Assembly (NCBI RefSeq): GCF_000143415.4
Contig: NW_003314446.1
Span: forward strand, 47,738 to 111,737
Origin: Selaginella moellendorffii
Taxonomy: Eukaryota > Plantae > Lycopodiophyta
Direction of reading: 5' to 3'
Length of the DNA: 64,000 nucleotides
The position numbers and the translations under genes were made by a program. Under the pieces are notes generated by a model that did no database searches, was not told the DNA's origin, and saw only the letters and a program-made list of their open reading frames with translations. This document shows, piece by piece, positions 14,401 through 56,436 of this stretch. Every line of letters begins with the position of its first letter. Positions within the stretch are counted from its first letter, which is position 1.

Positions 14401-14775
14401 GTTCTTATGGTTGGAAGTTACAACCTTGAAAATTATTAATGCGTACTTGTGGAGCAAAGGTCAAAGAGTTGTTCTTTAGTGAAAAATAATATTCATTGGC
14501 TGGTTCTTATGGTTGGAAGTTACGACCTTGAAAATTATTAAGACGTACTTGTAGAGCAAAGGTTCTTTAGTGAAAAATAATATTCATTGGCTGGTTCTAT
14601 GGTTGGAAGTTACAACCTTGAAAATTATTATGGAGCAAAGGTCAAAGAGTTGTTCTTTAGTGAAAAATAATATTCATTGGCTGGTTCTTATGGTTGGAAG
14701 TTACAACCTTGAAAATTCTTATTAAGAAAAGGTAAAAAAGTGTTTTTCTTTAGTGAAAAAGAGTATTTATTGGCA
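14401..14775. repeat. Tandem array of four ~90-100 bp units
   Basis: GTTCTTATGGTTGGAAGTTACAACCTTGAAAATT...TTCTTTAGTGAAAAATAATATTCATTGGCTG repeated with unit-specific deletions. Confidence 0.9.
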
Positions 14776-17784: not shown

Positions 17785-17885
17785 AATCGTGGCCGTTGGT
17801 TCAGTGGTCCAAACCGTGGGCCAATCCTGGCCGTTGGTTCAGTGGTCCAAACAGTGGGCCAATCCTGGCCGTTGGTTCAGTGGTC
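17785..17885. repeat. 38-bp tandem repeat, ~2.7 copies
   Basis: AATCSTGGCCGTTGGTTCAGTGGTCCAAACMGTGGGCC starting at 17785, 17823 and 17861. Confidence 0.92.
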
Positions 17886-18238
17886 AGGTTCAATTTCACG
17901 TGTAGATACCATACAGTTTGTCGTTCTTTCGTCTCAAATACGGCTAGGACGTGGGAAATGGAAGCTCTAATGGTGTCTTGGAATATTACATGCCTCAAAC
18001 CCTAAACTCTCGGAAACCCTTGGTTTCCAGTTTGGCGCCAAGTCTCAATTAAATAAATTATATCTAGAGTTAGGGTTTTCCTCGCCATGGCGGATGAATG
18101 TTAATGTGTAATTCCATGGTTCCGGGCAAGAGGGAAGAGATCTAGAGCCTCTGGAACTTTCGCTGGAGCCCAAAATGAGGAAGAGCGGCCACGGAATCAG
18201 TAGATTTCGAGAGCACTTTCTTTCTCTCTTAATTTGAG

Positions 18239-18762
18239 GTCGCCTTTCATGAATGTTTGGATGCTCCGGGACCGGGAGCTGGAGCTGCGCCGGGAGATGG
18301 TGCGCTGAGAGCTGGAGCTGCGCCAGGATCTGGAGATCAGAGGCTTCTTTCTCGTTTGTTCATCATCCATTCTTTCATTCTTTCTTTCATTTGTGCTTGT
18401 GTTTCTTTCATTCCATTCTTTCTTGGGGCCTCATCGTCTTCTTCTTCCATGAAGAAACGTGTGTCGTTCTTGGGTATGTTGAGGCGATTTTTCTGACTAA
18501 CATCCGTGGTCGTGAGGCGTTTCGAAAACCTGCAAACCAAATGGATGATCAAATGCCTAGAAGAAAGAACAGCGAGGCTGTGACGAAAGACGTGAAACTG
18601 CGCCATGGGAACTTGGTGTGGACACTCGGCATCAGATTCCAAGCGGGAAGGATCAATTACCTTCTCAATTGGAAGCCTGTGGTAGATCATTTCCGCCTTG
18701 AAGCTGGACGCATGGTAAGGCTCAGCAAGCTGGGAGTGTACTACTTTCTACTTGAGGTGTAG
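18239..18762 (+). pseudogene. B3 DNA-binding-domain gene disrupted by an internal inversion (18425-18560)
   Basis: B3 N-half FSKRLTTTDVSQKNRLNIPK reads on the - strand; C-half VKLRHGNLVWTLGIRFQAGRINYLLNWKPVVDHFRLEAG reads on the + strand; re-inverting joins them in frame. Confidence 0.8.
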
Positions 18763-19503
18763 TTACATTGAGTGTGGAGCAATATAGTTTGATCAATGCA
18801 AACGCTTTTGTAGCAATTCTGGCTAGTCTTACATGGTAGCATGGATTATGCCTGAGCCCGACAATTTTCGAGTGAATGCCATGGTGGTGCTTATAGCTCT
18901 CTCTTGCTCGGGTACATAGAAAATGGCCGCAGGCCACAGGGACCACCAGGGAACTAAAGAAGATGATCGTTGATGTTAGCCACAGCAGCAGCACACCCGT
19001 GACATATCCCTCAGTGGATCTCCAACCGGTGTGGTTCCAAACACAAATCAGGTTCGCCTTGGTACTTTTCTCTTATCGAGAGAATGTGTTCTTGGAAGCG
19101 TTCGTACAAACTCTCTCTTCGTGTTCAAATGCTTGAACAGAAACTCAAAAGTGCATGGCCATCTTGCTTGGTTTTTTCTGACTGGTTTTGCGTGAGCAGA
19201 CTCTCGTCGAGCAATAGGCATCACTCACGACCGATCGAGAGCATCCATGACTCAATGTAAGTGTGCTTCTACATAATCACTGTCTGGGTGCAAAGAACAA
19301 AGTACTTTAACCTAATCAGGATAGTGCATGGAAGACACTAGGTTGTTTCTTTCTCGCAGCAGTGGACTTTCCTTGGATTGAAAGATGAATCACTTCTCGA
19401 GCTGTCTGACGGATGAGTCAACGAGATCGTTTTGGAGGCTCGCCCAGCCAAAGTGGGACGAGTTTCCAGGTCGAGAGCGCTGCAAATTTGAGCTCACGTG
19501 GAC

Positions 19504-29917: not shown

Positions 29918-32900
29918 TCACACTTCTTTGTTCGTCGACGTCTCGTAGATTCCTGCCATCAACACATAAGCCGAGGATAAATCCACACTCAAGCTCGCCA
30001 TCCTCTCAAACGCAAGCTTTCCCACCTCTAAATTCCTCCACTTGCTGCACGCACTCAAGAGTGTCATCCAAGTCACGGCATCCGGCTCGTAAGCCATCGC
30101 TTCCACCATCGCCACTGCATCTTCCAGCTCGTTAGCACGACCGAGAATATCAATCATGCAATGGTAGTGCTGGATACCTGGAGTAACTCCATACTTGGAG
30201 CTCATCGCCTTGAAGTAACTCTTGCCTTTGGCAACCAGGCCGGCATGGTTGCAAGCGCTGAGCAAACTCACGAAAGTTACACCGTCGGCCCGGAGACCAT
30301 CCTGCTGGAGCATCATATGAAACAGATCTTCCACCGCGGCTGCTTCTCCCAAGCGGCTGTGTCCTGCTATAACTGAGTTCCAAGTTACCAGATCACGGGA
30401 AGAACTTCCGAGTGTCTCAAAGAACAGTCGACAGCTAACCAAGCTTCCAGATTTCCCATAAACATCGACTAAACCGGTCGCAAGGTGCACGTTGTCTTCC
30501 AGACCACTTCTGCAAATCGAAGCATGGACACCTCGCAAGCTTTCCAGTCTAGAACAGGCCTTGATTGCCGCTCCATAAGTCTGAGCGTTTGGTGATATCT
30601 GCAGCTCTTGCATGCTCGTGAACAAAGCCAGTGCTGACTCTGGATCTCCATTCTCTGCGTACCCCAGCAGCAAAGAGTTCCACACCACGACATCCCTGCG
30701 AGCTGCTTTGTCGAAAACTCGTTGAGCGTCGGCCAAGCTGCCGCAGTTGGAGTACATGCTGATCAGAGCGCTCGCAACGTAAACGTCCTTGGAATCATAC
30801 TCGTGCTTCGCAGCCTGGGAGTGTAGAGCCTTCCCAGTCGAGAGTTTTCGTTGGATAGCACAAGCTTTGAGCGCCGCAACAAGCGTCAAGGCATCACCTT
30901 CGCAGCCTTCGGTTTGCATCCTGGCGAAAAGTTCCAAGGCCTCGTCTCCTCGACCTGCATCGACATATCCCAGCATTAGCGAGGTCCATGAAACCAAGCT
31001 GCGGCAGGCAAGAGTATCAAATACCTTTCTCGCCTCCTCCAGGCTTCCACACTTGGCATAGAAGTCCACAAGCGTGTTAGCCAGACATATATCCGAGTCA
31101 TAACCAGCCTCCAATACTTGGAAATGGATGTTCCTCCCTTTCTTCAGCAAACGATCTCTCACACGCTCGTCCTCCTCACTTCTCACTGCACAGAAAACAC
31201 AGGCCTTTAGTACCGCAGCAAAAGATAAAGGATTTGGCAGCAAACCATCGTGGAGCATGCGAGAGAAAAGCTCCAGAGCCGCAGAAGCCTCACCATTGTC
31301 CGTGAGTCCCAGCAGCAGTATGTTCCACGAAACAAGACTCCGGCGGTCTCTGATGCTGTGGAACACCTTCCGAGCCTCGGTAATGCTTCCACACTTGCAA
31401 TACATGTTTACCAGCGAGCTTGCGACATAACCATCAGAATCGAGCCCCGACTTCACAGCATCAAAGTGGACTGCCTTTCCTTTCTCCAGAGCTTCCGCCT
31501 TGAAAGCTTTGCTCTCGCTGAAAGCTTTTCCTTCTTCCTCTTGTTCTTGGTCTTCTCTCAAAGCTAGACTCGTGCAGGCCTTGAGAGCAGCCACAAAGCT
31601 GAGAGAGCTCGCTGGACACTTCCGGCGCATCAAACCAAACATCTCCAAGGCCAGATTTTCCTTGCCATTCTCCGCGTAGCCGAGAATCATCGCATTCCAG
31701 GACACAACATCCGGGCACGGCATCTTGTCGAACACCATCTTCGCATCAGCCAAGCTCCCGCACTTCGCATAAACGTCCACCAGCGTGTTTGCTACAAAGT
31801 TATCGTCCGTAAACCCGGCCTCTGCAGCTCGAGAACGAAGAGCCGTGATTTTTTCCAGCACCACGCCATTCTCTTTTGGAGAGCTTCTGGCAAGAGTGGA
31901 GCAAGCCTTGAGTGCCGCAACGTACGTGAGGCCATTTGGCTGACAGGCTCGCGGAGGCCGCATCAAAGCAAAGAGCTCCAAAGCCACATCTCCTTCACCA
32001 TTCTCGACATATCCAAGCAGCAACGCGTTCCACGAAACAACACTGCGATCCGGCATCCTCTCAAACACTTCTCTCGCTTCGGCCATGCTCCAGCACTTGG
32101 CATACATGTCGATCAGCGAGTTTGAGACAAAGTTCTCGAGCTCGCAACCACTTTTCCTGGCTTGCAGATGGAGAAACTTGCCTCTTTCCAAGGCCCGGAC
32201 TTTCACAAGCCTCCCATCAACCTGTCTGCCTTGTTCTCTCACCGCCAGGCAAGAGCTAGCCTTGAGAGCCGCCACAAAGCTCAGAGAATCCGCCAAGCCT
32301 TGCTGCTGCATGACAGAAAAGAGCTCGAGAGCACTCTCCGGTTCTTCGTTGTCGACGTACCCCAGGAGCAAAGAGTTCCACGACACGACGTTTTTGTTTC
32401 CTCGAGCACCACCTCTCTCGTCAAAAACTTTGCGAGCATCTTCCATGCTCCCACACCTCGCGTAGAAATTCACCAGGCTACTCGACACAAAAGCATCCCT
32501 GTCGAATCCAAACTTGGCAGCTCCAGCGTGAAAATCCCTGCCTCTCTCCAGCAAAACCATCTTTCTCTCCCGGCCTAGTTCTTTCATCGCCATCTTCGTG
32601 CAAGCCTTGATAGCAGCGACGAAAGTGAGAGCATCCGGCCTCCAGCCTTGAGACACCATCTCCGCTATCATCTCCAAGCAGAGCTCCTCCTCCCCATTCT
32701 CGGCATAGCCGAGAAGCAAGGAATTCCACGACACCACCGTTCGCCGAGCGCTGCTCATCCTGTCAAAAACTCTCCTGGCATCCGCCATGCTTCCACACTT
32801 TGCATACATATTTACCAGGCTGTTTAGAACATAGGTGTCGGAGTCGTGCCTCTCTCGGATCGCTTCCAAATGGAGCGCCTTCCCGGCCCTCAAATCCCTG

Positions 32901-33019
32901 GATCGGCTACACGCCTTCAATGCCGCCAGTAGCCTGTTCTTCCCCGCATTCCCTGCTCCATCGCTGAGAAGCGGGACAGAATTCTCAGAAATGGAAGCAG
33001 GCCCCGGCAGCTCGCGCAT
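29918..33019 (-). CDS. PLS-class PPR protein with E domain and no DYW; L motifs carry long insertions
   Basis: 1033-aa ORF with repeated LVxMYxKCGS..A..VF / VSWN motifs; ends HY.CMIDILGRA..PDAVTWMTLLSAC. Confidence 0.95.
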   Translation of the reverse strand: MRELPGPASISENSVPLLSDGAGNAGKNRLLAALKACSRSRDLRAGKALHLEAIRERHDSDTYVLNSLVNMYAKCGSMADARRVFDRMSSARRTVVSWNSLLLGYAENGEEELCLEMIAEMVSQGWRPDALTFVAAIKACTKMAMKELGRERKMVLLERGRDFHAGAAKFGFDRDAFVSSSLVNFYARCGSMEDARKVFDERGGARGNKNVVSWNSLLLGYVDNEEPESALELFSVMQQQGLADSLSFVAALKASSCLAVREQGRQVDGRLVKVRALERGKFLHLQARKSGCELENFVSNSLIDMYAKCWSMAEAREVFERMPDRSVVSWNALLLGYVENGEGDVALELFALMRPPRACQPNGLTYVAALKACSTLARSSPKENGVVLEKITALRSRAAEAGFTDDNFVANTLVDVYAKCGSLADAKMVFDKMPCPDVVSWNAMILGYAENGKENLALEMFGLMRRKCPASSLSFVAALKACTSLALREDQEQEEEGKAFSESKAFKAEALEKGKAVHFDAVKSGLDSDGYVASSLVNMYCKCGSITEARKVFHSIRDRRSLVSWNILLLGLTDNGEASAALELFSRMLHDGLLPNPLSFAAVLKACVFCAVRSEEDERVRDRLLKKGRNIHFQVLEAGYDSDICLANTLVDFYAKCGSLEEARKVFDTLACRSLVSWTSLMLGYVDAGRGDEALELFARMQTEGCEGDALTLVAALKACAIQRKLSTGKALHSQAAKHEYDSKDVYVASALISMYSNCGSLADAQRVFDKAARRDVVVWNSLLLGYAENGDPESALALFTSMQELQISPNAQTYGAAIKACSRLESLRGVHASICRSGLEDNVHLATGLVDVYGKSGSLVSCRLFFETLGSSSRDLVTWNSVIAGHSRLGEAAAVEDLFHMMLQQDGLRADGVTFVSLLSACNHAGLVAKGKSYFKAMSSKYGVTPGIQHYHCMIDILGRANELEDAVAMVEAMAYEPDAVTWMTLLSACSKWRNLEVGKLAFERMASLSVDLSSAYVLMAGIYETSTNKEV

Positions 33020-43640: not shown

Positions 43641-43922
43641 GTGTTACTGGCACACTTGCTATGTACGTGTCATTATCAGCTTAACTATTTGTTTGATATC
43701 CTACCTACATTGATCCATTTCCACACAAGGCGCTTCAAGGGGTAAGGCGAGATATGAATTCGAGGGGCAAGGCACTCTCCCACTTTTTTTGCAGGAAATT
43801 TATAGAATCTAACAATGTTTTCCTGGCTTTCCTAGAATGTCCTGAAGAAAACAAGGTTGGGGTGGAGTAAGGGCCGAGTCCTTGCGGGTAGCCTGTGTCC
43901 AAACTTTCAAGTTTGGGTTCAA

Positions 43923-45241
43923 ATGGGAAAATTACCACTACCACTGGAACTTGAGTTGCGCGTACTATCTTGGGTCCCAGCTGAGGATGTAGCAAGGTTG
44001 CAACTTGTGTGCAAGGATTGGGGTCGCCTTCTCCATGACCCAACATTTAGAGCACTATGGGAACGACAGAATGGCACAAGTTCTTTCTTGTTACATGTAA
44101 AACGTCACGCGAGAGATAGCCTAGAAGTGCAATTTCGCTACTGCAAATATGATCCATCAGAAAACAGGGCTTGCTTGAAACAGGTACCTCCTTCATTACG
44201 GTCTTGGTTTGCACCAGATGGTTCAGAGCCACTCTTGGCTGGAGGGGGCCTCATTTTGTGCTGGTTTCCAAGGGTGTCGGGTTCAAGCGGACTTGTCGAC
44301 AGCACCAACAGGGAGTCCCCTTTCCTAGTTGGGAACCCGCTGACACAAGAATGGGTAAAGATTCCTGGACTTGAAGTTCCTCTGTATTATAGCAAGCGAA
44401 TGCTGACTACATATTTCGATGAGGGTCAGATGTTCTTCAGGTACAAAAGCGTTGTCATTACTAGTTTCCACCATGCTAATCGACTCATTTCGTTTCTTCG
44501 TTCAGGATTTGGCTTGAGCCATATTCGTTTGACTCTAAAGTCGGCATTTGGACAGTTCCTCGTGCTGTGGTCTTCGGAATGTGCTCGTACAACAGCGTAT
44601 GCGTCAAAGGGGTGCATTATGCTCTTGCACGACTTCATCAATATGCCGCACTTGTGCTGCTGGAAGTTGATTTTGCGGACATTAGCCGCTCGAAATGGGC
44701 GTATGCATGGGACTTATCGGAACTTGAGGGGACCTACGAAGATGTGTACATGCTGGAAGTTGGACCTGGTGAGATTGGTATATTTACACAAAAGATGGAG
44801 TGGATGGAGTATACAACGGTTATGGTGTTAGATAGGCAGCAGAACGATGATGGAGATTTAGAGTGGACATGGAAAACAGTGTCGACCTCACCTGAAGAAG
44901 ACTTTGAAACGGGACCAGGCATAATCCAGACTTCTGAATGCCAGACGCATGGGAAGGATACCTTCTGCGTTGCGGAGCAAGGGATTGTGAGATTCGATTC
45001 TCAAAACTTGACATGGGAATGGGTTGAGAAGGGGCAGCACTTGGAAAGAGTTATGGAGAAACTGCTCCTTTTGGAACCCAACTTGGCAGCTGTGCCTAGC
45101 TTGGACTTGAAGTCAGCCTGTGCCAGCCGGTTTCGAAAGGTCTGCTATGTGGGTCATCCTGTGGAGCACGAATTCTCAGGTGAGTGTTTTTCTATTAACA
45201 TGTTCGTATTGATATTGGTGGACACTGACTTTCAGACTTGA
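43923..45241 (+). CDS. F-box protein with a beta-propeller-type C-terminus; intron ~44440-44505; 3' end uncertain
   Basis: LPLELELRVLSWVPAEDVARLQLVCKDW; LAGGGLILC; FLVGNPLTQEWVKIP; ORFs 43857 and 44567 are joined by a GT-AG intron. Confidence 0.82.
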
Positions 45242-46780: not shown

Positions 46781-47827
46781 ATGTATCCCCCTGTCTACGT
46801 GGGCAAGGAGAAATTGCCCAGTGGAGATTTGAGGAATCACCTTCGCGTGGAGGAATGGAATGCCCTGATCGATGGTGCGGCCAGCCGATCGCAGCTGCGC
46901 AGCGTATGGGCACACGTCAAGAAGATCCAAGCCACGAATTTGCCGATGAGCGTCTATCTCTCGAATCTCCTCCTCCGAGCGTTTGGCCGCCGCGCAGGGA
47001 TCAAGGATGCCCTCCTCGTTTTCGATGCCATGGTCGTCAAGAGCTGCTACTCGTGGATTCTTGTTCTCGCCGCGATCTCTCTCGATCGATGCAAGGGCAT
47101 TGATCTAGATCTAGATCACGGCAAGAGATTCGCAAGCGAACACAGGGCGGCTGGAGGGCAGATTTCTTGGAACACAAAGCTCGCTGCGATCTCCCAGGGC
47201 GGGGATTTCTCCCTCGCGAAGAATTTCTTCCGCGCGATGCCTTGCCGGGACGACATTTCGTGGCACTCGATGGTCGCCGCCGCCGCGCACAGCGGCGATT
47301 TGGACGAGATAGCGCAGATCTTCGAAAGAATGCCGATGAGAGATTCCTTCTCGTGGAACGCGATGGTCGCAGCATTTGCCCAGGCCGGGCATTTGCACGA
47401 CGTATCGCTAGTCTTCTCCCAAATGCCATGGCGGGAAGTTCTAGCGTGGAATTTGATCCTCGCGGTTCTCTTCCGGAAGGGCGAGTGGAGGAATGCGCTG
47501 CGCCACTATCGATTGATGGTGCTGGAGGGCGTGGAGCCGGACGAGCTTACGTTCGTGACGCTCTTGGTAGGATCGAGCTTTCTCGACTATGGTCATCTTA
47601 TCTTCTCGTGGATGATCATGGATCATGGCATCCAACCAGTACGCCTCCACTACACTTCCATCGTCTATCTCCTGCGAAAGAACCATCGCCCAGCAGAGGC
47701 AAGGGTGTTCCGAGCTGGGATCTCGATTGAGGAAGACAACCTCTGGGCGAAATTCCTGGTAAGTTTCTCCAGCTTTGTGATCTTATTCATGTTCATGTTA
47801 ATGAATGAATTGATATTTCTCTCGTGA
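46781..47827 (+). CDS. Short, degenerate PLS-class PPR protein
   Basis: Several MP.RD..SWN motifs, then EGVEPDELTFVTLL and DHGIQP...HY. Confidence 0.75.
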   Translation: MYPPVYVGKEKLPSGDLRNHLRVEEWNALIDGAASRSQLRSVWAHVKKIQATNLPMSVYLSNLLLRAFGRRAGIKDALLVFDAMVVKSCYSWILVLAAISLDRCKGIDLDLDHGKRFASEHRAAGGQISWNTKLAAISQGGDFSLAKNFFRAMPCRDDISWHSMVAAAAHSGDLDEIAQIFERMPMRDSFSWNAMVAAFAQAGHLHDVSLVFSQMPWREVLAWNLILAVLFRKGEWRNALRHYRLMVLEGVEPDELTFVTLLVGSSFLDYGHLIFSWMIMDHGIQPVRLHYTSIVYLLRKNHRPAEARVFRAGISIEEDNLWAKFLVSFSSFVILFMFMLMNELIFLS

Positions 47828-47849
47828 AAGGTTCTAACTGGTGTGATCG

Positions 47850-49672
47850 TCACTGCTGTCCAGGCGCATAAAAACCGAGCTCCATCAGTATCGCGGCAAT
47901 CTCCTCCGGATGTTGCTTTGGATCCCGGGCGGTGGAAGGAGAGACTTTTGCTTTGGAACTCGAGACATTCGTAGAGTTCCGCGATGACGATGCTGCTGCT
48001 GGAGAGGATTCGGCAACTTGGCCGTGATGGAGGAGCTCCAGCGTCTTCTGGAGTTCCTGGAGCTGGCTCGAGAACTCCCTCACCGTGAGACCGTATGGCT
48101 GGACCTTCTCGAGCTTGCGGAGCTTAAGGAGGACTCCGAGGACGGAGCTTTGGCCGGCCAAGGTGCTGGAGATGCCCGCTACTGCCTGTGGGATGATCGT
48201 TTCATTAGCAAGGAAGTGGAAAGTCTGCAAGTTTTGTCACCTTTTTAGCGTCGGCTCCTTGCAACTGCGAGAGACCGGCGACCGAGAGGCTGGATGCCAG
48301 GGGTGCTGTAACAGATGCCGCGAGCAGGAAGTTCGTGCTGGTGTTGTAAGCATCGAATGCCGGGTCGAGATCCTTTCCAAAAGCAGCGTTCATGATCTTG
48401 GTGAAGACTCCCTTGCCAGCGTCAATTTGAGGCTTTCCAGCGGCGTCCTTGAGCAATCCTTGCAAGACGCTGCCAAGAACAAGCCAGAGAAATAATCAAG
48501 AAGAACAGAACGAAAAAAGAATGGAGAAGTTGGAAGCACAGAGCCTACCTGATGTGCGACTTAAGCTGCGATTGGAACTTCGACGTCAACATCTTCACGG
48601 ACGGATCCTTGAAGCGTGCAGCTCGAGAGTACTGATCGGACAAGAGCAACTCGGCGCTGAGAATCTCAGCAAGTATCCTCGCGTCTGTCATCTTCGTGCT
48701 TGCTGGTAGCTTACCGCAGTCGTCACAAGGAGGATACTCGCATTTCTCGCATGGAGGCGGCTCTGTTGGTGGCGAGCTGCAATCGTCGCAAGATGGTGGC
48801 GGATACTCGGAGCTCTCGTTGCAAGGAGATGGCGCCGGCGGTGGTGGCGTATGACAATCCTTGGGAGGAGGAGGAGGAGGATACTCCGGTGGTGTTGGCG
48901 TGTGACACTCGCAAGGAGGTGGAGGATACTCCGGTGGTGTTGGCGCATGGTAATCCTCGCAAGGCGGTGGTGGATACTCCTGCATTGGTGGGGGCTTACT
49001 ATCGCAAGGTGGTGGCGATGGCGGTGGATAAGCTGGCGACGGTGGTGGTGGACAAACTGGTGACGTTGGTGGTGGATAAACTGGCGACGGTGTTGACGTT
49101 GGTGGCGACGCTGGTGGCGATGGAGGTGGCGGGCAAGAAGACGGTGACGATGGAGACGAGTAACCATCCGATGGTGGTGACGCTGGTGGTGGGTAAACTG
49201 GCGGCGATGGAGGCGGCGGGTAAGAAGACGGTGGCGATGGAGACGAGTAACCATCTGGTGGTGGTGACGCTGGTGGTGGATAAACTGGCGGTGATGGAGG
49301 CGGCGGGCAAGAAGACGGTGGCGATGGAGATGAGTAACCATCCAATGGTGGTGACGCTGGTGGTGGGTAAACTGGCGGCGATGGAGGCGGCGGGTAAGAA
49401 GACGGTGGCGATGGAGACGAGTAACCATCTCGTGGTGGTGACGCTGGTGGTGGATAAACTGGCGACGCTGGTGGCGATGGAGGCGGCGGGCAAGAAGTTC
49501 CATGCGGTGGCGATGGAGCCGAGTAACCATCCGGTGGCGGGGACGAGTAGACGTAAGTAACGGGAGGCGGTGGCGATGGATACTGCAGCACAATGTTCTT
49601 GATGGGGCGAGCTTCAAGCCGTGAGCACCACCATAGCTGGAGAACCAGCAAGATCATCCACCAAGTAGCCAT
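47850..49672 (-). CDS. Secreted extensin-like (SPn/YPn) protein fused to a PCC13-62 desiccation-related ferritin-like domain; 3 exons (49672-48549, 48469-48241, 48185-47850)
   Basis: Signal peptide MATWWMILLVLQLWW; Pro-rich repeats; FTKIMNAAFGKDLDPAFDAY..STNFLLA and VQPYGLTVREF match the PCC13-62 pattern; GT-AG introns in frame. Confidence 0.8.
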
Positions 49673-49898
49673 TGAGCGATGGATCAGCGAAGAGCTGCGA
49701 TCCAAACAAGCACAAAAGAAGAATTTATAGTCTCAAGGATTGCCAACGTACTTGTCATGCAGCTCGCGATGATCTACTCGGAGTTGTCACATTCCCAACT
49801 TAGGACACAATCTCCAGTCAAAGCCCAGTCAAGCGTCAACGGCCACTGGAAGTCAACTCCCCCATGGAAGAAGAAGAAGAAGCTGTGTTGTGCCGTGA

Positions 49899-52274
49899 AT
49901 GATCGTCCATGGATGGATGAAACTATCGCCCCCAAGAACTCTTGATGGCTTCGTCCGGCTCCTAAGATCTTGCATCGAGGACCGCAATCTCGATCGAGGG
50001 CGGCTCGTCCACGACTGGATCCTTGCAAGCCACCAGCATCGCGAGAGCCTCCTCCTCGCGAACCAGCTGATTGGAATGTATTCCAAGTGTGGGAGCTTGC
50101 AAGACGCGATCGACGTCTTCAACCGCCTCCAAAGCCCCGATGTTGTGTCCTGGAACTCGCTGATGACGGCATTTGCCAGGAACCGGCAACCACACCGAGC
50201 GCTTGAGCTCTTCCGGGAGATGCCCCGCAAGGATTTGGTGTCCTGGAACATCGCCATCCAGGTGTTCTTGGAAGAATATAGGATCCAGGAGGCCGATCAT
50301 GCGATGGATCTCGTGCCACAGCACAGCGCTGTCACATGGAACTCGATGATTTCCACATATGCCCAGAGGGGGCATTTGCAAGAGTGTTGGGATCTCTTCC
50401 ATCACCCGGCGTTGGAGAGAGATCGGCTGTCCTGGAACACAATGCTGGTGGCGCTTTTGGCGTCCGGAGAAATCGAGAAGGCCAGCGGCGTCTTCTCGAG
50501 GATGCCAATGCGAGAGATCCTCTCCTGGAATGCGATGATCGCTGCTTACGGACGGATTGATGCCGGTGCTGCCAAGAACATCTTCGATCAGGCGCTGGAG
50601 AGGGATATCATCGCTTGGAACACGCTGCTCCGGGTGTGTGCTCGATTCGGCCTCCTTGACAGCGCTAGGGAGGCCATGGAAAAGATGCCCCTCTGGGACC
50701 CCGTCTCCTGCACGACGATCCTTGCGGCACACACGCAGAGGGGGGTTCTTGCCGACGCCAAGAAGATCTTCGATGCCGTGCCGAGAAATCTCTTCTCCTG
50801 GAATGCGATGCTCGCCTGCTACCTCCAGAATCGCGAGGTCGGGACCGCCATGGGGATTCTTGCCGAAATGCCGGAGAAGGATGTGATCACCTGGAACACG
50901 ATGATCGCCGGCCTCGCGGCGAACGGGCACCTCGCCGACGCGAAGGCGATCTTCGAGTCCATGGCGAGCCGCGACGCGACGAGCTGGGGATCGATCGTGG
51001 CGGCGCTCGCGGAGGACGAATCGTCGATCGAGGAAGCCCTAGGGGCATACCGGCGGATGCCGCAGCACGACCTTTGTTCTTGGAACGCGCTCATCGCGAA
51101 GGATATTGCCGCCGCGAGGGGAATATTCGACGGCGCCAAAGAGAGAAACGTTGTGACGTGGACATCTCTGATCGTCGCCACCTGTCGGGTGGCGGACGGC
51201 ATCGGTGGCGCCGAGGATATCCTTGAGAGAATGCCCGCCTGGGACGTTGTGTGCTTGAATGTGATGATCGGAGCTCACAGCCAGTGTGGGAATTTCGAGA
51301 GGGCGAAAGAGATCTTCGATGGATTGCCCGAGAGGAGCCTCCATTCCTGGAACGCGATGCTCCAGATCGCGACTGCCATGGAAGAGGAACAGGGCGATTG
51401 CTACTGCGAGGGAACGAGAGAGATTTTCTTCGATCGAATGCCTGCTAGAGATGTTGTGTCGTGGACGATCCTCCTCGCGGCATTTGCCCAGCAATCTCTC
51501 CTCGCGGAAGCAAAGAGGGCTTTCGATCTGGCGCCCCAGCGAAGCTTGATCACCTGGAATGTGATGCTCGGGATCTATGCATCTGCTAGCGCTATCGATC
51601 CAGCGAAAGAGATCTTCCAATCCATGCCGGAGAGAGACATCGTCTCGCAAAACTCCATCGTCGCAGCATTTGCCCTGGGCGGGCAAATCGATGAATCTCT
51701 CCAGTTCCTCGAGAGAATGCCGCAGCACAACGCCGGATCGTGGAACTCGCTGCTGCTGGGTTGCGCCCATCACGGCGTCCTCGACCGATCCAAGCAGTTC
51801 TTCGCCAGGGTCCCAAACAAGAACATCGTCTCCTGGAACGCGCTCCTGGATGCCTGCGCGCGAAACGGGCAGGGCGAGCTCGCGATCGAGATGCTGCGCG
51901 AGCTCTGCCTGGATGGATCATCGCTGCCGGATGGGATCTCCTTCACGCACGTCTTGGCCGCGTGCACACACATCGGATCTCTGGAGATTAGCCGGAGCTT
52001 CTTCGTGTCTCTCGCGCATGACTATGGATTGATCGCCGACAAAGAACACTGTTGCTCCATGGTGGACGTCCTCTGTCGATCCGGGCAGCTTGGATTCGCG
52101 GAGGAGCTCATAAACTCGGTGCCACTCCTTGGATCCGACAATGTCGCGCTGGGAAGCTTGCTCGCTGCTTGCCACACTCACCACGATCTGGAGCGAGCGT
52201 ATAGGGCGCTTCCTCGCGATCACACGAGCTCGTCACACTACGTGATTCTTTCCAATATCTTGACAAGCATTTGA
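49899..52274 (+). CDS. PLS-class PPR protein made mostly of tandem short (S/SS) motifs, with E domain
   Basis: 791-aa ORF; ~31-aa repeats A..IF..MP.RD..SWN. Confidence 0.93.
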   Translation: MIVHGWMKLSPPRTLDGFVRLLRSCIEDRNLDRGRLVHDWILASHQHRESLLLANQLIGMYSKCGSLQDAIDVFNRLQSPDVVSWNSLMTAFARNRQPHRALELFREMPRKDLVSWNIAIQVFLEEYRIQEADHAMDLVPQHSAVTWNSMISTYAQRGHLQECWDLFHHPALERDRLSWNTMLVALLASGEIEKASGVFSRMPMREILSWNAMIAAYGRIDAGAAKNIFDQALERDIIAWNTLLRVCARFGLLDSAREAMEKMPLWDPVSCTTILAAHTQRGVLADAKKIFDAVPRNLFSWNAMLACYLQNREVGTAMGILAEMPEKDVITWNTMIAGLAANGHLADAKAIFESMASRDATSWGSIVAALAEDESSIEEALGAYRRMPQHDLCSWNALIAKDIAAARGIFDGAKERNVVTWTSLIVATCRVADGIGGAEDILERMPAWDVVCLNVMIGAHSQCGNFERAKEIFDGLPERSLHSWNAMLQIATAMEEEQGDCYCEGTREIFFDRMPARDVVSWTILLAAFAQQSLLAEAKRAFDLAPQRSLITWNVMLGIYASASAIDPAKEIFQSMPERDIVSQNSIVAAFALGGQIDESLQFLERMPQHNAGSWNSLLLGCAHHGVLDRSKQFFARVPNKNIVSWNALLDACARNGQGELAIEMLRELCLDGSSLPDGISFTHVLAACTHIGSLEISRSFFVSLAHDYGLIADKEHCCSMVDVLCRSGQLGFAEELINSVPLLGSDNVALGSLLAACHTHHDLERAYRALPRDHTSSSHYVILSNILTSI

Positions 52275-52337
52275 GAAAACCATTGTGTGTGTGCGTGTTC
52301 TTGGTCGATCCAAGTTCCAGCGCGCAATGCTTGCTCT

Positions 52338-54299
52338 ATGATCGCTGGGCGATGGCTGCTACAAGCATTCAGGGAAGCTCTTGCCAGCGCCGGCGCGCCC
52401 AAGAGCATCGAAGGCCAGTACGCCAATCTCCTGCGCCAATGCCGAGATCTCGGCGAGGCAAAGCGTCTCCACTGCTTGATCCGAGAGCGCGGCCACGGAT
52501 CCAGTACCTACGTCTCCAACATGATCGTCCAAATGTATGGCAAGTGTGGCAGCGTCGACGACGCATGGATCGTCTTCTCCTCGATCCAAGCTCGCAACGT
52601 TTTCTCCTGGAACATGATCATCGCAGCATTTGCCCAGAACGGGCATTCGGAGCGCTCAGTGACGCTTTTCTGGCGGATGATCCGCGAGGAGCCGGGCATT
52701 ATCCCCACCAGGATCACATTCCTCCACGCACTAGAGAAGCTCAAGAACCTCGCGGAGGGGAGGAAGATCCATGAGCTTGCAATTACCGTGGGGCTAGAAA
52801 GCGATACAGCAGTGGGCACAGCAATCGTCACCATGTATGGGAAATCCGGGAGCCTCGCCGATGCCAAGCGCGTGTTTGATCGATTGAAGCGCAGGGATGT
52901 CGTGGCCTGGACAGCGCTCATCACTGCCTACACCCAGAACGGGCATTGCGAAGAGGCGCTGGATCTCTACAGCTCGATGGAACCGGATGGCGTGGCTCCA
53001 AATCAGTACACCTTCACGATTGTGATCGATGCGTGTGCGGAGCTGGGACGGCTGGACGAGGGCATCGCGATCCACGCAAGGATCACTGCCGCTGGGCTGG
53101 AATCCTGGATTGAGGTCGTGAATTCGCTGATCAATCTCTATGGGAACTGCAAGAGATTGAGTGAGGCTGAGAGGATCTTCCAGAGAATGCCCAGGAGGAG
53201 CTCTGTTTCGTGGAACTCTATGATCGCAGCGTATGCTCACAATGGGCACCCAGGAGATGCGATCGATCTCTACAAGAGAATGCGCGGCGATGGATCCGTG
53301 AAGCTCGATCCAGTGACATTCGTGAATGTTCTTGGTGCTTGTTATAGCCAGGAAGATCTGGCGGCTGGGCGATCGATCCATCACGACGCCATAGCTCGCG
53401 GGCTTGGATCTCATCTAGTGCTCGCCTCCGCGGCTGTGAGCATGTATGGGCGCTGTGGCAGCGTCGAGGAATCCATGGCGACGTTCGAGAGAATGGAGAT
53501 CAAAGACGGTGTCGCGTGGAATGCTGTGATCGCAGCTCTTGCCCAGAACGGTGAATCGAGCAGCGCTCTCCATTTCTATCGCCGCATGCTCTGGAGCTCC
53601 AGCTCGAAACCCAACGAGGCGACGTTCATCAGTGTTCTTGAGGCATGCTCCATCGCCGACGAGGGGATCAAGATCCACCAGCACATCGTCGACAGTGGGA
53701 TCGTCCACTCCACCATGATCTCCACCGCGATCTTCAACATGTATGCCGAGTGTGGCCGCCTCGATCGCGCGCGAGAGATTTTCTCCTCCATGAGGGCGTC
53801 TCGCGGATCGTTCCAGAGCGCCAACGATGTTTCTTGGATGAACATGATCTCGGCACTCGCCAGGCACGGATCGATCGACGAGGCGCTGGAGCTCTTCCGA
53901 GAGATGCGATTGGAGGGCGGCAAACCCAGCGAGATCGTTTTTATCAGCATCCTCCACGGGTGTAGCCACTCCGGGACGATGGAGCAGGGATTGGGGCATT
54001 TTCTCTCGATGATCCAAGATCATGGGCTTGCTCCGCGAGTGGAGCACTATGGGTGCTTGATCGATCTCCTTGGGCGAGGTGGGCATCTGGATCTGGCGCA
54101 GGACCTAGTGGATCAGATGCCGTTTGAGCCGGATGCCAGAGCGTGGTCTAATTTCTTGGGATCTTGCCGGCTGCATTCTGATCGCGATCGAGCCGAGGCC
54201 GCGGCGATCCGGGTGTTTGAGCTAGAGCCGGAGAAAGCCGCGATCTATGTGTCCTTGTCCGGGATGTGCTTCGCAGAGGAAGACGAAGAAGACCCCTAA
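52338..54299 (+). CDS. PLS-class PPR protein with E domain
   Basis: First ATG at 52338 in the ORF 52287-54299; canonical P-L-S triplets; HYGCLIDLLGRGG, MPFEPDARAW. Confidence 0.93.
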   Translation: MIAGRWLLQAFREALASAGAPKSIEGQYANLLRQCRDLGEAKRLHCLIRERGHGSSTYVSNMIVQMYGKCGSVDDAWIVFSSIQARNVFSWNMIIAAFAQNGHSERSVTLFWRMIREEPGIIPTRITFLHALEKLKNLAEGRKIHELAITVGLESDTAVGTAIVTMYGKSGSLADAKRVFDRLKRRDVVAWTALITAYTQNGHCEEALDLYSSMEPDGVAPNQYTFTIVIDACAELGRLDEGIAIHARITAAGLESWIEVVNSLINLYGNCKRLSEAERIFQRMPRRSSVSWNSMIAAYAHNGHPGDAIDLYKRMRGDGSVKLDPVTFVNVLGACYSQEDLAAGRSIHHDAIARGLGSHLVLASAAVSMYGRCGSVEESMATFERMEIKDGVAWNAVIAALAQNGESSSALHFYRRMLWSSSSKPNEATFISVLEACSIADEGIKIHQHIVDSGIVHSTMISTAIFNMYAECGRLDRAREIFSSMRASRGSFQSANDVSWMNMISALARHGSIDEALELFREMRLEGGKPSEIVFISILHGCSHSGTMEQGLGHFLSMIQDHGLAPRVEHYGCLIDLLGRGGHLDLAQDLVDQMPFEPDARAWSNFLGSCRLHSDRDRAEAAAIRVFELEPEKAAIYVSLSGMCFAEEDEEDP

Positions 54300-54414: not shown

Positions 54415-56436
54415 CTAGCGCCTGTCCGTCTTTCCAGTAGATCTCTTCCCAGCAAACAAATGCTTGGGCCGGAGATTGACAATGGTTCGATCGGCTTCTC
54501 CCTTCCTCGCGAACTTGTTCCTCTTCTTCATCGCCTTCTTGCCCAGTGCCAATGCCTGCTGCTTCTGTGCCGAGTCCTTGAATCCCTCGCCTGGAACGAC
54601 TTCCATCGACGCGCGAGACTGCGACCTCGTCCTGGACTTCATCCTCAACTTCTTGCTCTTTGGCTGCTCCACGTCCATAGCCTCCACCCCGGCCTCCTCG
54701 TCATACCCGAGTGATCGATCCCGCTTTCTTCCGCGAGATTTGCTTCGAGCTCTCGCCGCTGCTGCCGATGGATCGATCCCCAGGTTTGATAGGTGGCGCT
54801 CCATCCTGGAAACCGTGAATCTCTTGTCCTTGTCGTGCTTCCTGGGAACCATTGGACGGCTATCGGCAGTGGTCTTCTTCAGCCTGTGCTCCTCCCGGAT
54901 GTTCCTTCTCGCGAGACGAATCGCCGCTAGCGCCTCCTGTTCCTCCGGACTGAGCTTGCGGAACTCGTCGTCGTCCATGTCCTCTTCCTCGCTCTCTCCC
55001 TCCTCCCGCTGGTGCTCCTCGCGATCCAGCTCGTCCAACCTCTTGAGAATGTCCGTGTCGATGAAGTCCGCGATGTTGTGACCGTCTGCTATCTCCGGCA
55101 CCACGTCCTCCTTCCAGCTCTCGTCCGCGAGAATGTAGCGCCTTCTCAAGTTGGCGGAGTAAACTCCAGCGCCACCATTCTCGTTCTCCAGATCCTTCTC
55201 GAGTCGTCTCGGGGCCCTCGGCGCCGCCGCTGCTCGAGCTTCCAACACCCCAGCTGGAATCACCGGCGGCCTCTCTCTGGTGTCCCTGGGACGAGGCATC
55301 GCGACGTGGATCCTGTTCCTCACGTCCTCGAGCTTCTTTGACTTCATCTTCCCCTCCACACGGTGCTGGAGCAGCTTCTCGCACGCAGTGTTCTTCACGT
55401 TGATCACGCCTTCCTCCGTGAGGGTGCTCATCGTGAGAAGGCAGTCGTCGTCCTCGACCATCATCTCGCTGGCAATTCCCCCCGAGCACTTGGACGCCTC
55501 CTTCTTCATCTCCATGATCAGCTGGCGATCCTCCTCCGGCAGCGACTCCAGCGACTGGAGATCGATCTTGCTGCACACCACGAGCAGCGGCTTGTTGTCA
55601 AACAAAGGCCGGATGCTGTTGAAGAGCGCTGCCTGCTGGGCGATGGAGTAGCCACAAGAACCCGAGACGTCGACGAAGAACAGCACCGCAGCTCGGATGT
55701 GAGCCAGAGCAGTGATACTCAGCATCTCGATCGTGTTCCTGTCCTCGAGCGGGTGATCCAAGATCCCCGGAGTGTCAATCACTTGCCAGCGGAGGTACTT
55801 GTAGTCCGTGTGACCAACAAAGAGTGACTTTGTGGTGAAGGCGTAAGGCTGGACGTCAACGTCGGCTCGAGTGATCTTGTTGATGAAGGAGCTCTTACCA
55901 ACGTTTGGATAGCCGCAGATGAGGATGGTTCTCGTGTTTGGATCGATCGATGGAAGCCTCGCCATATGCTGCCTGACCTGTTCCAAGTACGCTAGACTCG
56001 GCCCGACCCTCTTCATGAGCGTACACATTCTTCCCAGCGCGGCCTTCTTGAGCTGCTTGCAACGATAGAGCGAATCGCCATACTTGAGGAGCTTCACGTA
56101 GTCCTTGCAGATCTTCTCTACCAGTCGCTTCGCAGTGCGCAATTGCCCAAGCGCGAGCTTGTAGTGATCCCTGTCGTAGAGCACATTCATCAAATCCCCG
56201 TAGAAGGGATGGATGTCGTCCAGCTGCGGGAACTCGTCGATGATCGTGCCCAGCTTCTCATCGAATGTGGCCTGCGTGTACTTTACCTTGCGCATGTAGA
56301 ACTGGCGGATGCGATTGATCGCATAGCTCTTGTGGATCACCGTCGGCGTCTGGCGCTGCGTCCGGGAGAGGACAATGTCGACGAAATCCTTGCCTGTCGG
56401 CACCACGGTGATGCGCTTGAGATTGTAGTGCACCAT
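54415..56436 (-). CDS. NOG1: Nucleolar GTP-binding protein 1, intronless
   Basis: LSRTQRQTPTV, GYPNVGKSS, QPYAFTT, DTPGILD, C-terminal PKHLFAGKR..GKTDRR. Confidence 0.97.
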   Translation of the reverse strand: MVHYNLKRITVVPTGKDFVDIVLSRTQRQTPTVIHKSYAINRIRQFYMRKVKYTQATFDEKLGTIIDEFPQLDDIHPFYGDLMNVLYDRDHYKLALGQLRTAKRLVEKICKDYVKLLKYGDSLYRCKQLKKAALGRMCTLMKRVGPSLAYLEQVRQHMARLPSIDPNTRTILICGYPNVGKSSFINKITRADVDVQPYAFTTKSLFVGHTDYKYLRWQVIDTPGILDHPLEDRNTIEMLSITALAHIRAAVLFFVDVSGSCGYSIAQQAALFNSIRPLFDNKPLLVVCSKIDLQSLESLPEEDRQLIMEMKKEASKCSGGIASEMMVEDDDCLLTMSTLTEEGVINVKNTACEKLLQHRVEGKMKSKKLEDVRNRIHVAMPRPRDTRERPPVIPAGVLEARAAAAPRAPRRLEKDLENENGGAGVYSANLRRRYILADESWKEDVVPEIADGHNIADFIDTDILKRLDELDREEHQREEGESEEEDMDDDEFRKLSPEEQEALAAIRLARRNIREEHRLKKTTADSRPMVPRKHDKDKRFTVSRMERHLSNLGIDPSAAAARARSKSRGRKRDRSLGYDEEAGVEAMDVEQPKSKKLRMKSRTRSQSRASMEVVPGEGFKDSAQKQQALALGKKAMKKRNKFARKGEADRTIVNLRPKHLFAGKRSTGKTDRR

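What the first reader, a model, noticed from the sequence alone, without database searches (positions are those of the whole stretch)
18416..18569. B3-domain gene switched off by a 136-bp inversion bounded by 9-bp inverted repeats
Seen: 18425-18560 lies between TTCTTTCTT (18416-18424) and AAGAAAGAA (18561-18569). Flipping it restores a pyrimidine-rich intron ending TTTGCAG and one stop-free frame: RFSKRLTTTDVSQKNRLNIPKNDTRFFMEEEDDEAP-RKNSEAVTKDVKLRHGNLVWTLGIRFQAGRINYLLNWKPVVDHFRLEAGRMVRLSKLGVYYFLLEV. Knowledge: K.LT.TDV...RL.IP and Y.L.W..V....L.AG are B3 hallmarks. The inversion loses no bases, so it is reversible in principle. Inference: most simply a recent one-off knockout; more speculatively a flippable ON/OFF allele. 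The upstream splice donor looks weak (AG/GC).
Basis: partly seen in the sequence, partly recalled or inferred. Interest (0 to 1): 0.75.

Follow-up and report, generated by a model that had tools for sequence, protein, structure and literature searches.

The report
Small inversion splitting a dead B3-like gene
In a decayed spikemoss copy of a small B3-like gene, a 136-base piece flanked by 9-base inverted repeats has been flipped, splitting the protein domain across the two strands; this is an ordinary one-off replication accident, not a genetic switch.

Summary
TTCTTTCTT (18416-18424) and AAGAAAGAA (18561-18569) bracket 18425-18560. The N-terminal half of a roughly 100-residue domain is coded on the minus strand (18529-18425). 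The C-terminal half is coded on the plus strand (18570-18759).

Three Selaginella moellendorffii gene models carry both halves contiguously and uninverted: SELMODRAFT_411671, 424172 and 413150. All other homologous parts of the window are collinear on the plus strand, so this is a true in-place micro-inversion relative to the paralogs.

The domain is a divergent B3-like domain. Pfam B3 is the best hit but stays below its threshold, and there is no DUF313 (PF03754) hit.

- The copy carries other lesions: a TAA at codon 6, a TAG or frameshift near 18201, a 49-nt stop-bearing stretch, no in-frame ATG, and a GC donor.
- The four-residue linker at the junction (IDQG in all paralogs) reads PRKNS here, exactly under the right repeat arm. 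The event was therefore probably not lossless, and that arm is probably partly its product.
- Nothing supports a reversible switch.

The best reading is a replication template-switch or MMBIR micro-inversion, a known class, in a pseudogene.

The parts
18087..18203 (+). 5' coding remnant. ATG at 18087, in-frame TAA at 18102-18104, then RARGKRSRASGTFAGAQNEEERPRN (18123-18197), then TAG at 18201-18203 where the paralogs continue RRFRA in another frame.
   Evidence: tblastn of P0001/P0006 residues 9-34 gives 77-80% identity. Three-frame translation.
18214..18262 (+). 49-nt stretch missing from the P0001/P0006 protein models, with stops in the frames read. It holds ATG 18253, the start used by the P0002 model (MFGC).
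18263..18342 (+). Gly/Ala-rich end of exon 1 (APGPGAGAAPGDGALRAGAAPGSGDQ + AG). It has two 33-nt repeat units where P0001 has three, and no in-frame ATG after the TAA at 18230.
   Evidence: tblastn P0001 39-75 and P0002 10-34. Direct repeat D2.
18343..18424 (+). 5' part of the intron. It has a GC donor at 18343-18344 and is T/C-rich, with a 12-nt tandem repeat at 18370-18424.
   Evidence: The exon boundary is inferred from the paralog proteins (..GDQ-R-FSKRL).
18416..18424 (+). Left inverted-repeat arm, TTCTTTCTT.
   Evidence: I13.
18425..18560 (-). The inverted segment. It holds the intron 3' end (18530-18560, acceptor TTTGCAG) and the N-terminal half of the B3-like domain (18529-18425: FSKRLTTTDV...EEEDDEA).
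   Evidence: BLASTP against P0001 residues 76-110 gives 83% identity. Pfam B3 positions 1-29, E 0.031.
18561..18569 (+). Right inverted-repeat arm, AAGAAAGAA. It codes R-K-N of the aberrant linker PRKNS, where the paralogs have IDQG.
18570..18762 (+). C-terminal half of the B3-like domain (SEAVTKDVKLRHGNLVW...LSKLGVYYFLLEV) plus the TAG stop.
   Evidence: phmmer against 1.84 billion representatives: P0001 2.4e-25, P0002 5.3e-15. BLASTP against P0001 residues 113-176 gives 80% identity.
18758..19275 (+). 3' flank collinear with the read-through part of the P0002 and P0006 models, with stops here. Homology to the paralogs' downstream F-box part ends near 19270.
   Evidence: tblastn hits at 18758-19060 and 19219-19266.

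Best explanation
The window holds a truncated, decaying paralog of a small Selaginella moellendorffii gene family. The family protein has a basic, Gly/Ala-rich N-terminus followed by one divergent B3-like domain, and in the paralogs the gene sits next to an F-box gene.

In this copy, 136 bp running from the 3' end of the single intron to the loop in the middle of the domain has been inverted in place.

The most likely cause is a single replication error. Either an inter-strand template switch or microhomology-mediated break-induced replication occurred between the T/C-rich intron motif TTCTTTCTT and the linker region. Such an event copies the spacer in reverse and leaves a perfect inverted repeat at both edges. 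The 9 nt at the right edge would then be wholly or partly written by the event, which would explain why the linker IDQG became PRKNS.

Shown here: the inversion relative to the paralogs, the abutting repeat, the linker change, and the other lesions. Inferred: the mechanism, the order of the lesions, and that the locus is not expressed.
For: 1. The N piece aligns to P0001 residues 76-110 and the C piece to residues 113-176, so the two are contiguous in the paralog.
2. tblastn of P0001, P0002 and P0006 gives the order plus 18123-18200, plus 18263-18355, minus 18531-18424, plus 18568-18759, plus 18758-19060, plus 19219-19266. Only 18425-18560 is flipped.
3. Both halves are closest to the same paralog, P0002, at similar identity: about 92% and 88%. 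This fits an in-place flip rather than a patch from another copy.
4. The perfect 9-bp repeat touches both edges, and its chance expectation is 0.006 or less.
5. A cluster of changes lies exactly under one arm (IDQG to PRKNS, one residue longer) while the flanking residues are conserved. This is the signature described for template switching between short inverted repeats: arm homogenisation, spacer inversion, and up to five neighbouring residues replaced (PMC8604942 abstract; PMC5453318).
6. Micro-inversions are reported as always flanked by directly adjacent inverted repeats of 3-75 nt (PMC8755829).
7. Other lesions in the copy, and loss of the downstream F-box part, mark it as a pseudogene or fragment.
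Against: - No paralog or allelic DNA was available, so the ancestral junction and intron are unknown. The linker PRKNS, and hence the right arm, could have existed before the inversion.
- The 136-nt spacer is several times longer than the 17-33 nt micro-inversions catalogued between human and chimpanzee.
- The 'other lesions' are judged against automatic gene models that themselves look like fusions. Some may therefore be model errors rather than real defects.
- The domain frame itself (102 codons once flipped) has no stop or frameshift. That fits a recent death of the gene, or a gene that was alive until the inversion.
- No reads or transcripts were examined.
Confidence: 0.7

Rival explanations
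1. One reading: a functional B3-like gene whose only or first disabling lesion is this lossless inversion, making it a recent knock-out allele.
For: The flipped frame is open over the whole domain, with a plausible acceptor. The domain shows no stop or frameshift despite 10-20% divergence from the paralogs.
Against: - TAA at codon 6, a TAG or frameshift near 18201, a 49-nt stop-bearing stretch, no in-frame ATG, and a GC donor.
- The linker is altered, so the event was not lossless.
- The closest paralog model, P0002, also needs a start inside that 49-nt stretch and lacks part of the C-half. This suggests the sub-lineage was already decaying.
Confidence: 0.15
2. Assembly or cloning artefact: the true genome is uninverted.
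Against: A clean in-place flip of 136 bp with perfect 9-bp repeats at both edges, lying inside the span of a single read, is not a typical misassembly pattern. The altered linker is a real sequence difference that a flip artefact would not create.
Confidence: 0.05
3. Two independent partial gene fragments that happen to lie head to head, with no inversion.
For: The locus is a truncated copy, and the region carries other repeats.
Against: - The two halves are exactly complementary: paralog residues 76-110 and 113-176, with no overlap or gap beyond the linker.
- Both are nearest to P0002.
- The minus-strand piece carries the intron's acceptor, and it lies between collinear plus-strand exon 1 and C-half.
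Confidence: 0.03
4. A reversible, recurrently flipping ON/OFF allele in a plant nuclear gene.
For: Perfect repeats flank the segment, and the frame is open in both orientations.
Against: - The arms are 9 bp of low-complexity sequence.
- The single-strand fold does not pair them (z -0.93).
- No recombinase was seen among the ten largest ORFs of the window.
- The 'ON' state would still lack an intact 5' end.
- All three paralogs are in one orientation.
Confidence: 0.02

Closest known systems
Micro-inversions flanked by short inverted repeats, produced by inter-strand template switching or MMBIR (Ripley model; four-point model of Loytynoja and Goldman, PMC5453318; Abraham and Hazkani-Covo, PMC8604942; Potapova et al., PMC8755829)
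   Same: In-place reverse-complementing of a spacer, a perfect inverted repeat directly adjacent to both edges, and a cluster of neighbouring amino-acid changes under one arm in coding DNA.
   Different: The spacer is 136 nt, against 6-33 nt in the catalogued cases. One arm lies in an intron and the other in an exon, so the event separates the two halves of a domain onto opposite strands. The ancestral DNA state was not seen here.
Plant B3 DNA-binding domain proteins (Pfam PF02362; VAL1, RAV1 and NGA1 B3 structures 6fas, 1wid, 5os9)
   Same: Domain length and order of motifs. B3 is the best Pfam hit across profile positions 1-89 in the intact paralogs, and B3 domains are the best PDB sequence hits.
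   Different: Scores are below Pfam's gathering threshold (23 against 30.1 bits). Only three annotated relatives were found, all in Selaginella. The fold could not be confirmed.
Small hairpin-associated inversions in plastid spacers (for example trnH-psbA, PMC2903610)
   Same: Short inverted repeats flanking a small segment that is found in either orientation.
   Different: Those have short loops and stable stems and flip recurrently in plastid DNA. Here the locus is nuclear, the spacer is 136 nt, no stable stem forms, and there is no evidence of two orientations.
Bacterial invertible promoter or gene switches (fim, hin, shufflons)
   Same: A segment between inverted repeats whose orientation decides whether a reading frame is whole.
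   Different: Those need a site-specific recombinase and longer specific sites. No recombinase was seen among the window ORFs scanned here, the host is a plant, and the gene is broken elsewhere too.

Membership tests
B3 DNA-binding domain (PF02362) | Match to the Pfam model at or above its gathering score (30.1 bits) | tested here: not met
   Window N piece 14.7 bits, E 0.031. Window C piece, no hit. Intact paralogs 23.1-23.7 bits, E 4.5e-5 to 7e-5. B3 is the top family each time but stays sub-threshold.
B3 DNA-binding domain (PF02362) | One continuous domain of about 100 residues covering the model end to end | tested here: met
   P0001 residues 77-168 cover profile positions 1-87 of 101, and P0006 covers 1-89. 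The window's two pieces map to P0001 residues 76-110 and 113-176.
B3 DNA-binding domain (PF02362) | Nearest solved structures are B3 domains; seven-stranded pseudo-barrel fold | tested here: inconclusive
   The top four phmmer hits in the PDB are VAL1 (three entries) and RAV1 B3 domains, but at E 0.08-0.35. The profile search hit NGA1 at E 0.61. The AlphaFold model was unusable at pLDDT 29, so no fold search was run. Atlas neighbours are TF-B3 clusters at 0.81-0.84, which is a lead only.
DUF313 / At2g31720-like (PF03754) | Match to the PF03754 model | tested here: not met
   No PF03754 hit at E up to 10 for the window pieces or the paralogs. It appears only as a minority annotation of Atlas neighbour clusters.
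Micro-inversion flanked by inverted repeats (template switch / MMBIR) | Segment reverse-complemented relative to homologs, with collinear flanks | tested here: met
   Shown at protein level against three paralogs.
Micro-inversion flanked by inverted repeats (template switch / MMBIR) | Inverted repeats directly adjacent to both edges of the inverted segment | tested here: met
   Perfect 9-bp arms abut the end of the N-half and the start of the C-half. Chance expectation is 0.006 or less.
Micro-inversion flanked by inverted repeats (template switch / MMBIR) | Ancestral (uninverted) DNA shows a near-repeat converted to a perfect one, or a templated insertion at the junction | not testable with these tools
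The only indirect evidence is the linker change from IDQG to PRKNS.
Programmed invertible DNA switch | Both orientations exist in a population or tissue | not testable with these tools
   No reads or second haplotype were available. All three annotated paralogs are uninverted.
Programmed invertible DNA switch | The 'ON' orientation yields an intact gene | tested here: not met
   Upstream TAA, a TAG or frameshift, a stop-bearing 49-nt stretch and no in-frame ATG all remain after a flip.

The most novel reading that the evidence does not exclude
The 9-bp repeats allow recurrent flipping, by replication template switching or recombination, so that haplotypes or cell lineages of Selaginella carry both orientations. 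That would be a stochastic ON/OFF allele of a B3-like regulator in a plant nuclear genome.
Probability: 0.02. Interest if true: 0.8.

Novelty: new member of a known kind. Interest (0 to 1): 0.22.

Why it matters
It is a clean plant example of a micro-inversion flanked by inverted repeats, with an unusually long 136-nt spacer. The inversion puts the two halves of one protein domain on opposite strands and rewrites the linker under one repeat arm.

It is useful as a caution for gene annotation. The present orientation still offers a 169-codon ATG-initiated ORF. It could also serve as a test case for template-switch detection in plant genomes.

It does not reveal a new mechanism or a new regulatory system. 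The gene concerned appears to be a dying copy of a tiny Selaginella-specific B3-like family.

Tried and rejected
- Word-index protein search with the C-half (candidates 93-296 aa) found nothing. This was a length-window effect, since the relatives are 345-378 aa.
- Searching the window for paralogs by tblastn found none.
Breakpoints could therefore not be defined at nucleotide level.
- AlphaFold2 on P0001 with a 5-row alignment failed at pLDDT 29, so no fold search was attempted.
- A profile search of the PDB with alignment A1 was weaker than the single-sequence search.
- Earlier-findings look-ups by sequence, by relatives and by words were blank.
- A paper search for the three locus tags found nothing.
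- A hairpin or cruciform model was rejected: the arms do not pair in the single-strand fold.
- I considered an alternative flip between the longer imperfect repeat 18345-18371 / 18540-18569. I rejected it because it would leave about 80 nt between the two domain halves and would not restore the frame.
- I considered an inverted duplication of the intron start. It is less likely, because the two copies are only about 75% alike, with indels, while the coding halves are well preserved.
It was only translated locally to check for stops.

Full report
**1. The observation**

TTCTTTCTT at 18416-18424 and AAGAAAGAA at 18561-18569 form a perfect 9-bp inverted repeat with 136 nt between the arms. The next bases on the inner and outer sides do not pair, so the repeat is exactly 9 bp.

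The minus strand of 18531-18424 reads RFSKRLTTTDVSQKNRLNIPKNDTRFFMEEEDDEAP. The plus strand of 18562-18759 reads RKNSEAVTKDVKLRHGNLVWTLGIRFQAGRINYLLNWKPVVDHFRLEAGRMVRLSKLGVYYFLLEV, followed by TAG.

A local flip of 18425-18560 gives one stop-free frame. It puts TTTGCAG, the reverse complement of 18530-18536, in front of the first domain codon. The upstream donor would be AG|GC at 18341-18344.

It was not sent to any search or fold. All searches used the two pieces separately, by reference.

**2. Is the repeat more than chance?**

On its own it is not.
- The left arm lies in a T/C-rich 12-nt tandem repeat at 18370-18424.
- The 9-mer occurs six times in the window against 1.5 expected.
- The right arm has a second perfect partner at 18378 (I12).

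What is not chance is its position. The arms directly abut the end of the N-half and the start of the C-half. Even at the window-wide rate of 9-mer inverted repeats, which is inflated by AT-rich stretches, the expectation for such a placement within +/-3 nt on both sides is 0.006. From local base composition it is about 4e-5.

**3. Is it really an inversion?**

Pfam gave only a weak B3 hit for the N piece (E 0.031, profile positions 1-29) and nothing for the C piece. The word-index search found nothing in its length window.

I therefore ran the exhaustive HMMER search with the C piece. It found two significant clusters:
- P0001: 345 aa, 82% identity, matching residues 114-175.
- P0002: 378 aa, 88% identity, matching residues 73-112.

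These are Selaginella moellendorffii models. P0001 is SELMODRAFT_411671. It has a 99%-identical partner, P0006 (SELMODRAFT_424172). P0002 is SELMODRAFT_413150. This fixes the organism, which earlier notes of the scan had named.

In P0001 the N piece aligns to residues 76-110 (83%) and the C piece to residues 113-176 (80%). The two halves are therefore contiguous and co-oriented in the paralogs.

tblastn of the three paralogs against the window gives this order:

| Window coordinates | Strand |
|---|---|
| 18123-18200 | plus |
| 18263-18355 | plus |
| 18531-18424 | minus |
| 18568-18759 | plus |
| 18758-19060 | plus |
| 19219-19266 | plus |

Only 18425-18560 is flipped. Both halves are closest to the same paralog, P0002 (about 92% and 88%). 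This argues for an in-place flip rather than a patch from another copy or two unrelated fragments.

**4. What the gene is**

The intact paralogs match Pfam B3 over profile positions 1-87 or 1-89 of 101, with E 7e-5 and 4.5e-5. At 23 bits they fall below the 30.1-bit gathering score.
- The four best PDB sequence hits are B3 domains of VAL1 and RAV1, at E 0.08-0.35.
- A profile search hit NGA1.
- Protein-atlas neighbours are TF-B3 clusters at 0.81-0.84, which is a lead only.
- PF03754 (DUF313) never matched.
- Structure prediction failed at pLDDT 29 with a 5-row alignment.

I call it a divergent B3-like domain. Strict membership is not proven.

The family is tiny. Only these three models were found.

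The models look like predictor fusions of a small B3 gene with a downstream F-box/Kelch-like gene.
- P0002 reads through 3' flank that carries stops in the window.
- P0006 splices out just before the position of the window's TAG.

The natural product is probably a protein of about 175 residues: a basic, Gly/Ala-rich N-terminus followed by one B3-like domain.

**5. Is the inversion what killed the gene?**

Probably not on its own. Measured against P0001/P0006:
- ATG 18087 is followed by an in-frame TAA at codon 6 (18102-18104).
- After ...EEERPRN the frame hits TAG at 18201-18203, while the paralog residues RRFRA continue in another frame.
- A 49-nt stretch (18214-18262) with stops separates this from the Gly/Ala-rich part.
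- The Gly/Ala-rich part lies in a third frame and has no in-frame ATG after the TAA at 18230.
- The donor is GC rather than GT.
- The paralogs' downstream F-box part is absent from the window, so the locus is a truncated duplicate.

P0002's predicted start (MFGC) lies inside the same 49-nt stretch. Its model also lacks part of the C-half. This suggests that the P0002/window sub-lineage was already decaying.

There are caveats. These comparisons rest on automatic gene models. The 102 domain codons themselves are free of stops and frameshifts.

**6. The junction**

All three paralogs read ...EEEDDEA-IDQG-EAV... The window, once flipped, reads ...EEEDDEA-PRKNS-EAV.... The residues on either side are conserved. 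The changed residues R-K-N are coded by the right arm, AAGAAAGAA.

About 12 nt seem to have been replaced by about 15 nt exactly under the arm.

This is the known signature of template switching between short inverted repeats.
- A near-repeat is made perfect (arm homogenisation) and the spacer is inverted, with up to five neighbouring residues replaced in coding DNA (PMC8604942).
- The four-point model also yields inversions flanked by newly made paired inverted repeats (PMC5453318).
- Catalogued micro-inversions are always flanked by directly adjacent repeats of 3-75 nt, for which MMBIR was proposed as an alternative mechanism (PMC8755829).

**7. A switch?**

Nothing supports it.
- The arms are 9 bp of low-complexity sequence.
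- The single-strand fold of 18406-18579 does not pair them and is no more stable than shuffles (z -0.93).
- The ten largest ORFs of the window encode PPR proteins, NOG1, an F-box protein and a WD40-like protein, or have no Pfam hit; none is a recombinase.
- The flipped state would still be broken upstream.

**8. Verdict**

This is a real micro-inversion flanked by inverted repeats, inside a probable pseudogene copy of a small Selaginella-specific B3-like family. It is best explained as a one-off replication template-switch or MMBIR event. It is a known kind of mutation, seen here as a new instance.

Interest is low to modest.

Noticed in passing
window 18345-18371 and 18540-18569: A second, nested imperfect inverted repeat. 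The first 27 nt of the intron resemble the reverse complement of the right end of the flipped segment plus the right arm. The shared blocks are TTCTTTCT, TTTG and a perfect 10-mer ATCATCCATT/AATGGATGAT. In the flipped state this would be a direct repeat inside the intron. It could instead hint at a more complex event such as an inverted duplication.
   Followed up: partly
window 17997-18005 and 18070-18078: Telo-box-like motif AAACCCTAA and its inverse TTAGGGTTT, 64 nt apart, just upstream of ATG 18087. This may be a promoter remnant of the B3-like gene.
   Followed up: no
window 17785-17885: A 38-nt tandem repeat, 2.7 copies, 96% matches, about 200 nt upstream of the gene remnant.
   Followed up: no
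window 18276-18341: A 33-nt coding tandem repeat (unit about GAAPGDGALRA) in exon 1. There are two units here and three in P0001/P0006, so copy number varies among the paralogs.
   Followed up: partly
window 18253-18762: In the present orientation, ATG 18253 opens a 169-codon ORF. It runs through the wrong frame of exon 1, the intron and the antisense of the flipped piece, and then reads in frame into the C-half of the domain. It is an annotation trap.
   Followed up: partly
P0001, P0006, P0002 (SELMODRAFT_411671, 424172, 413150): The public gene models look like fusions of a small B3-like gene with a downstream F-box/Kelch-like gene. P0002 translates 3' flank that carries stops in the window and skips the last third of the B3-like domain.
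   Followed up: partly
window 29918-33019, 46781-54299, 59171-61741; 54415-56436; 43857-44831: The rest of the window is ordinary gene space: several long PPR genes, a NOG1 GTPase gene, and an F-box/beta-propeller gene that is distantly similar (26%) to the F-box part of P0002.
   Followed up: partly
window 14453-14774: A 91-nt tandem repeat, 3.5 copies, 83% matches.
   Followed up: no
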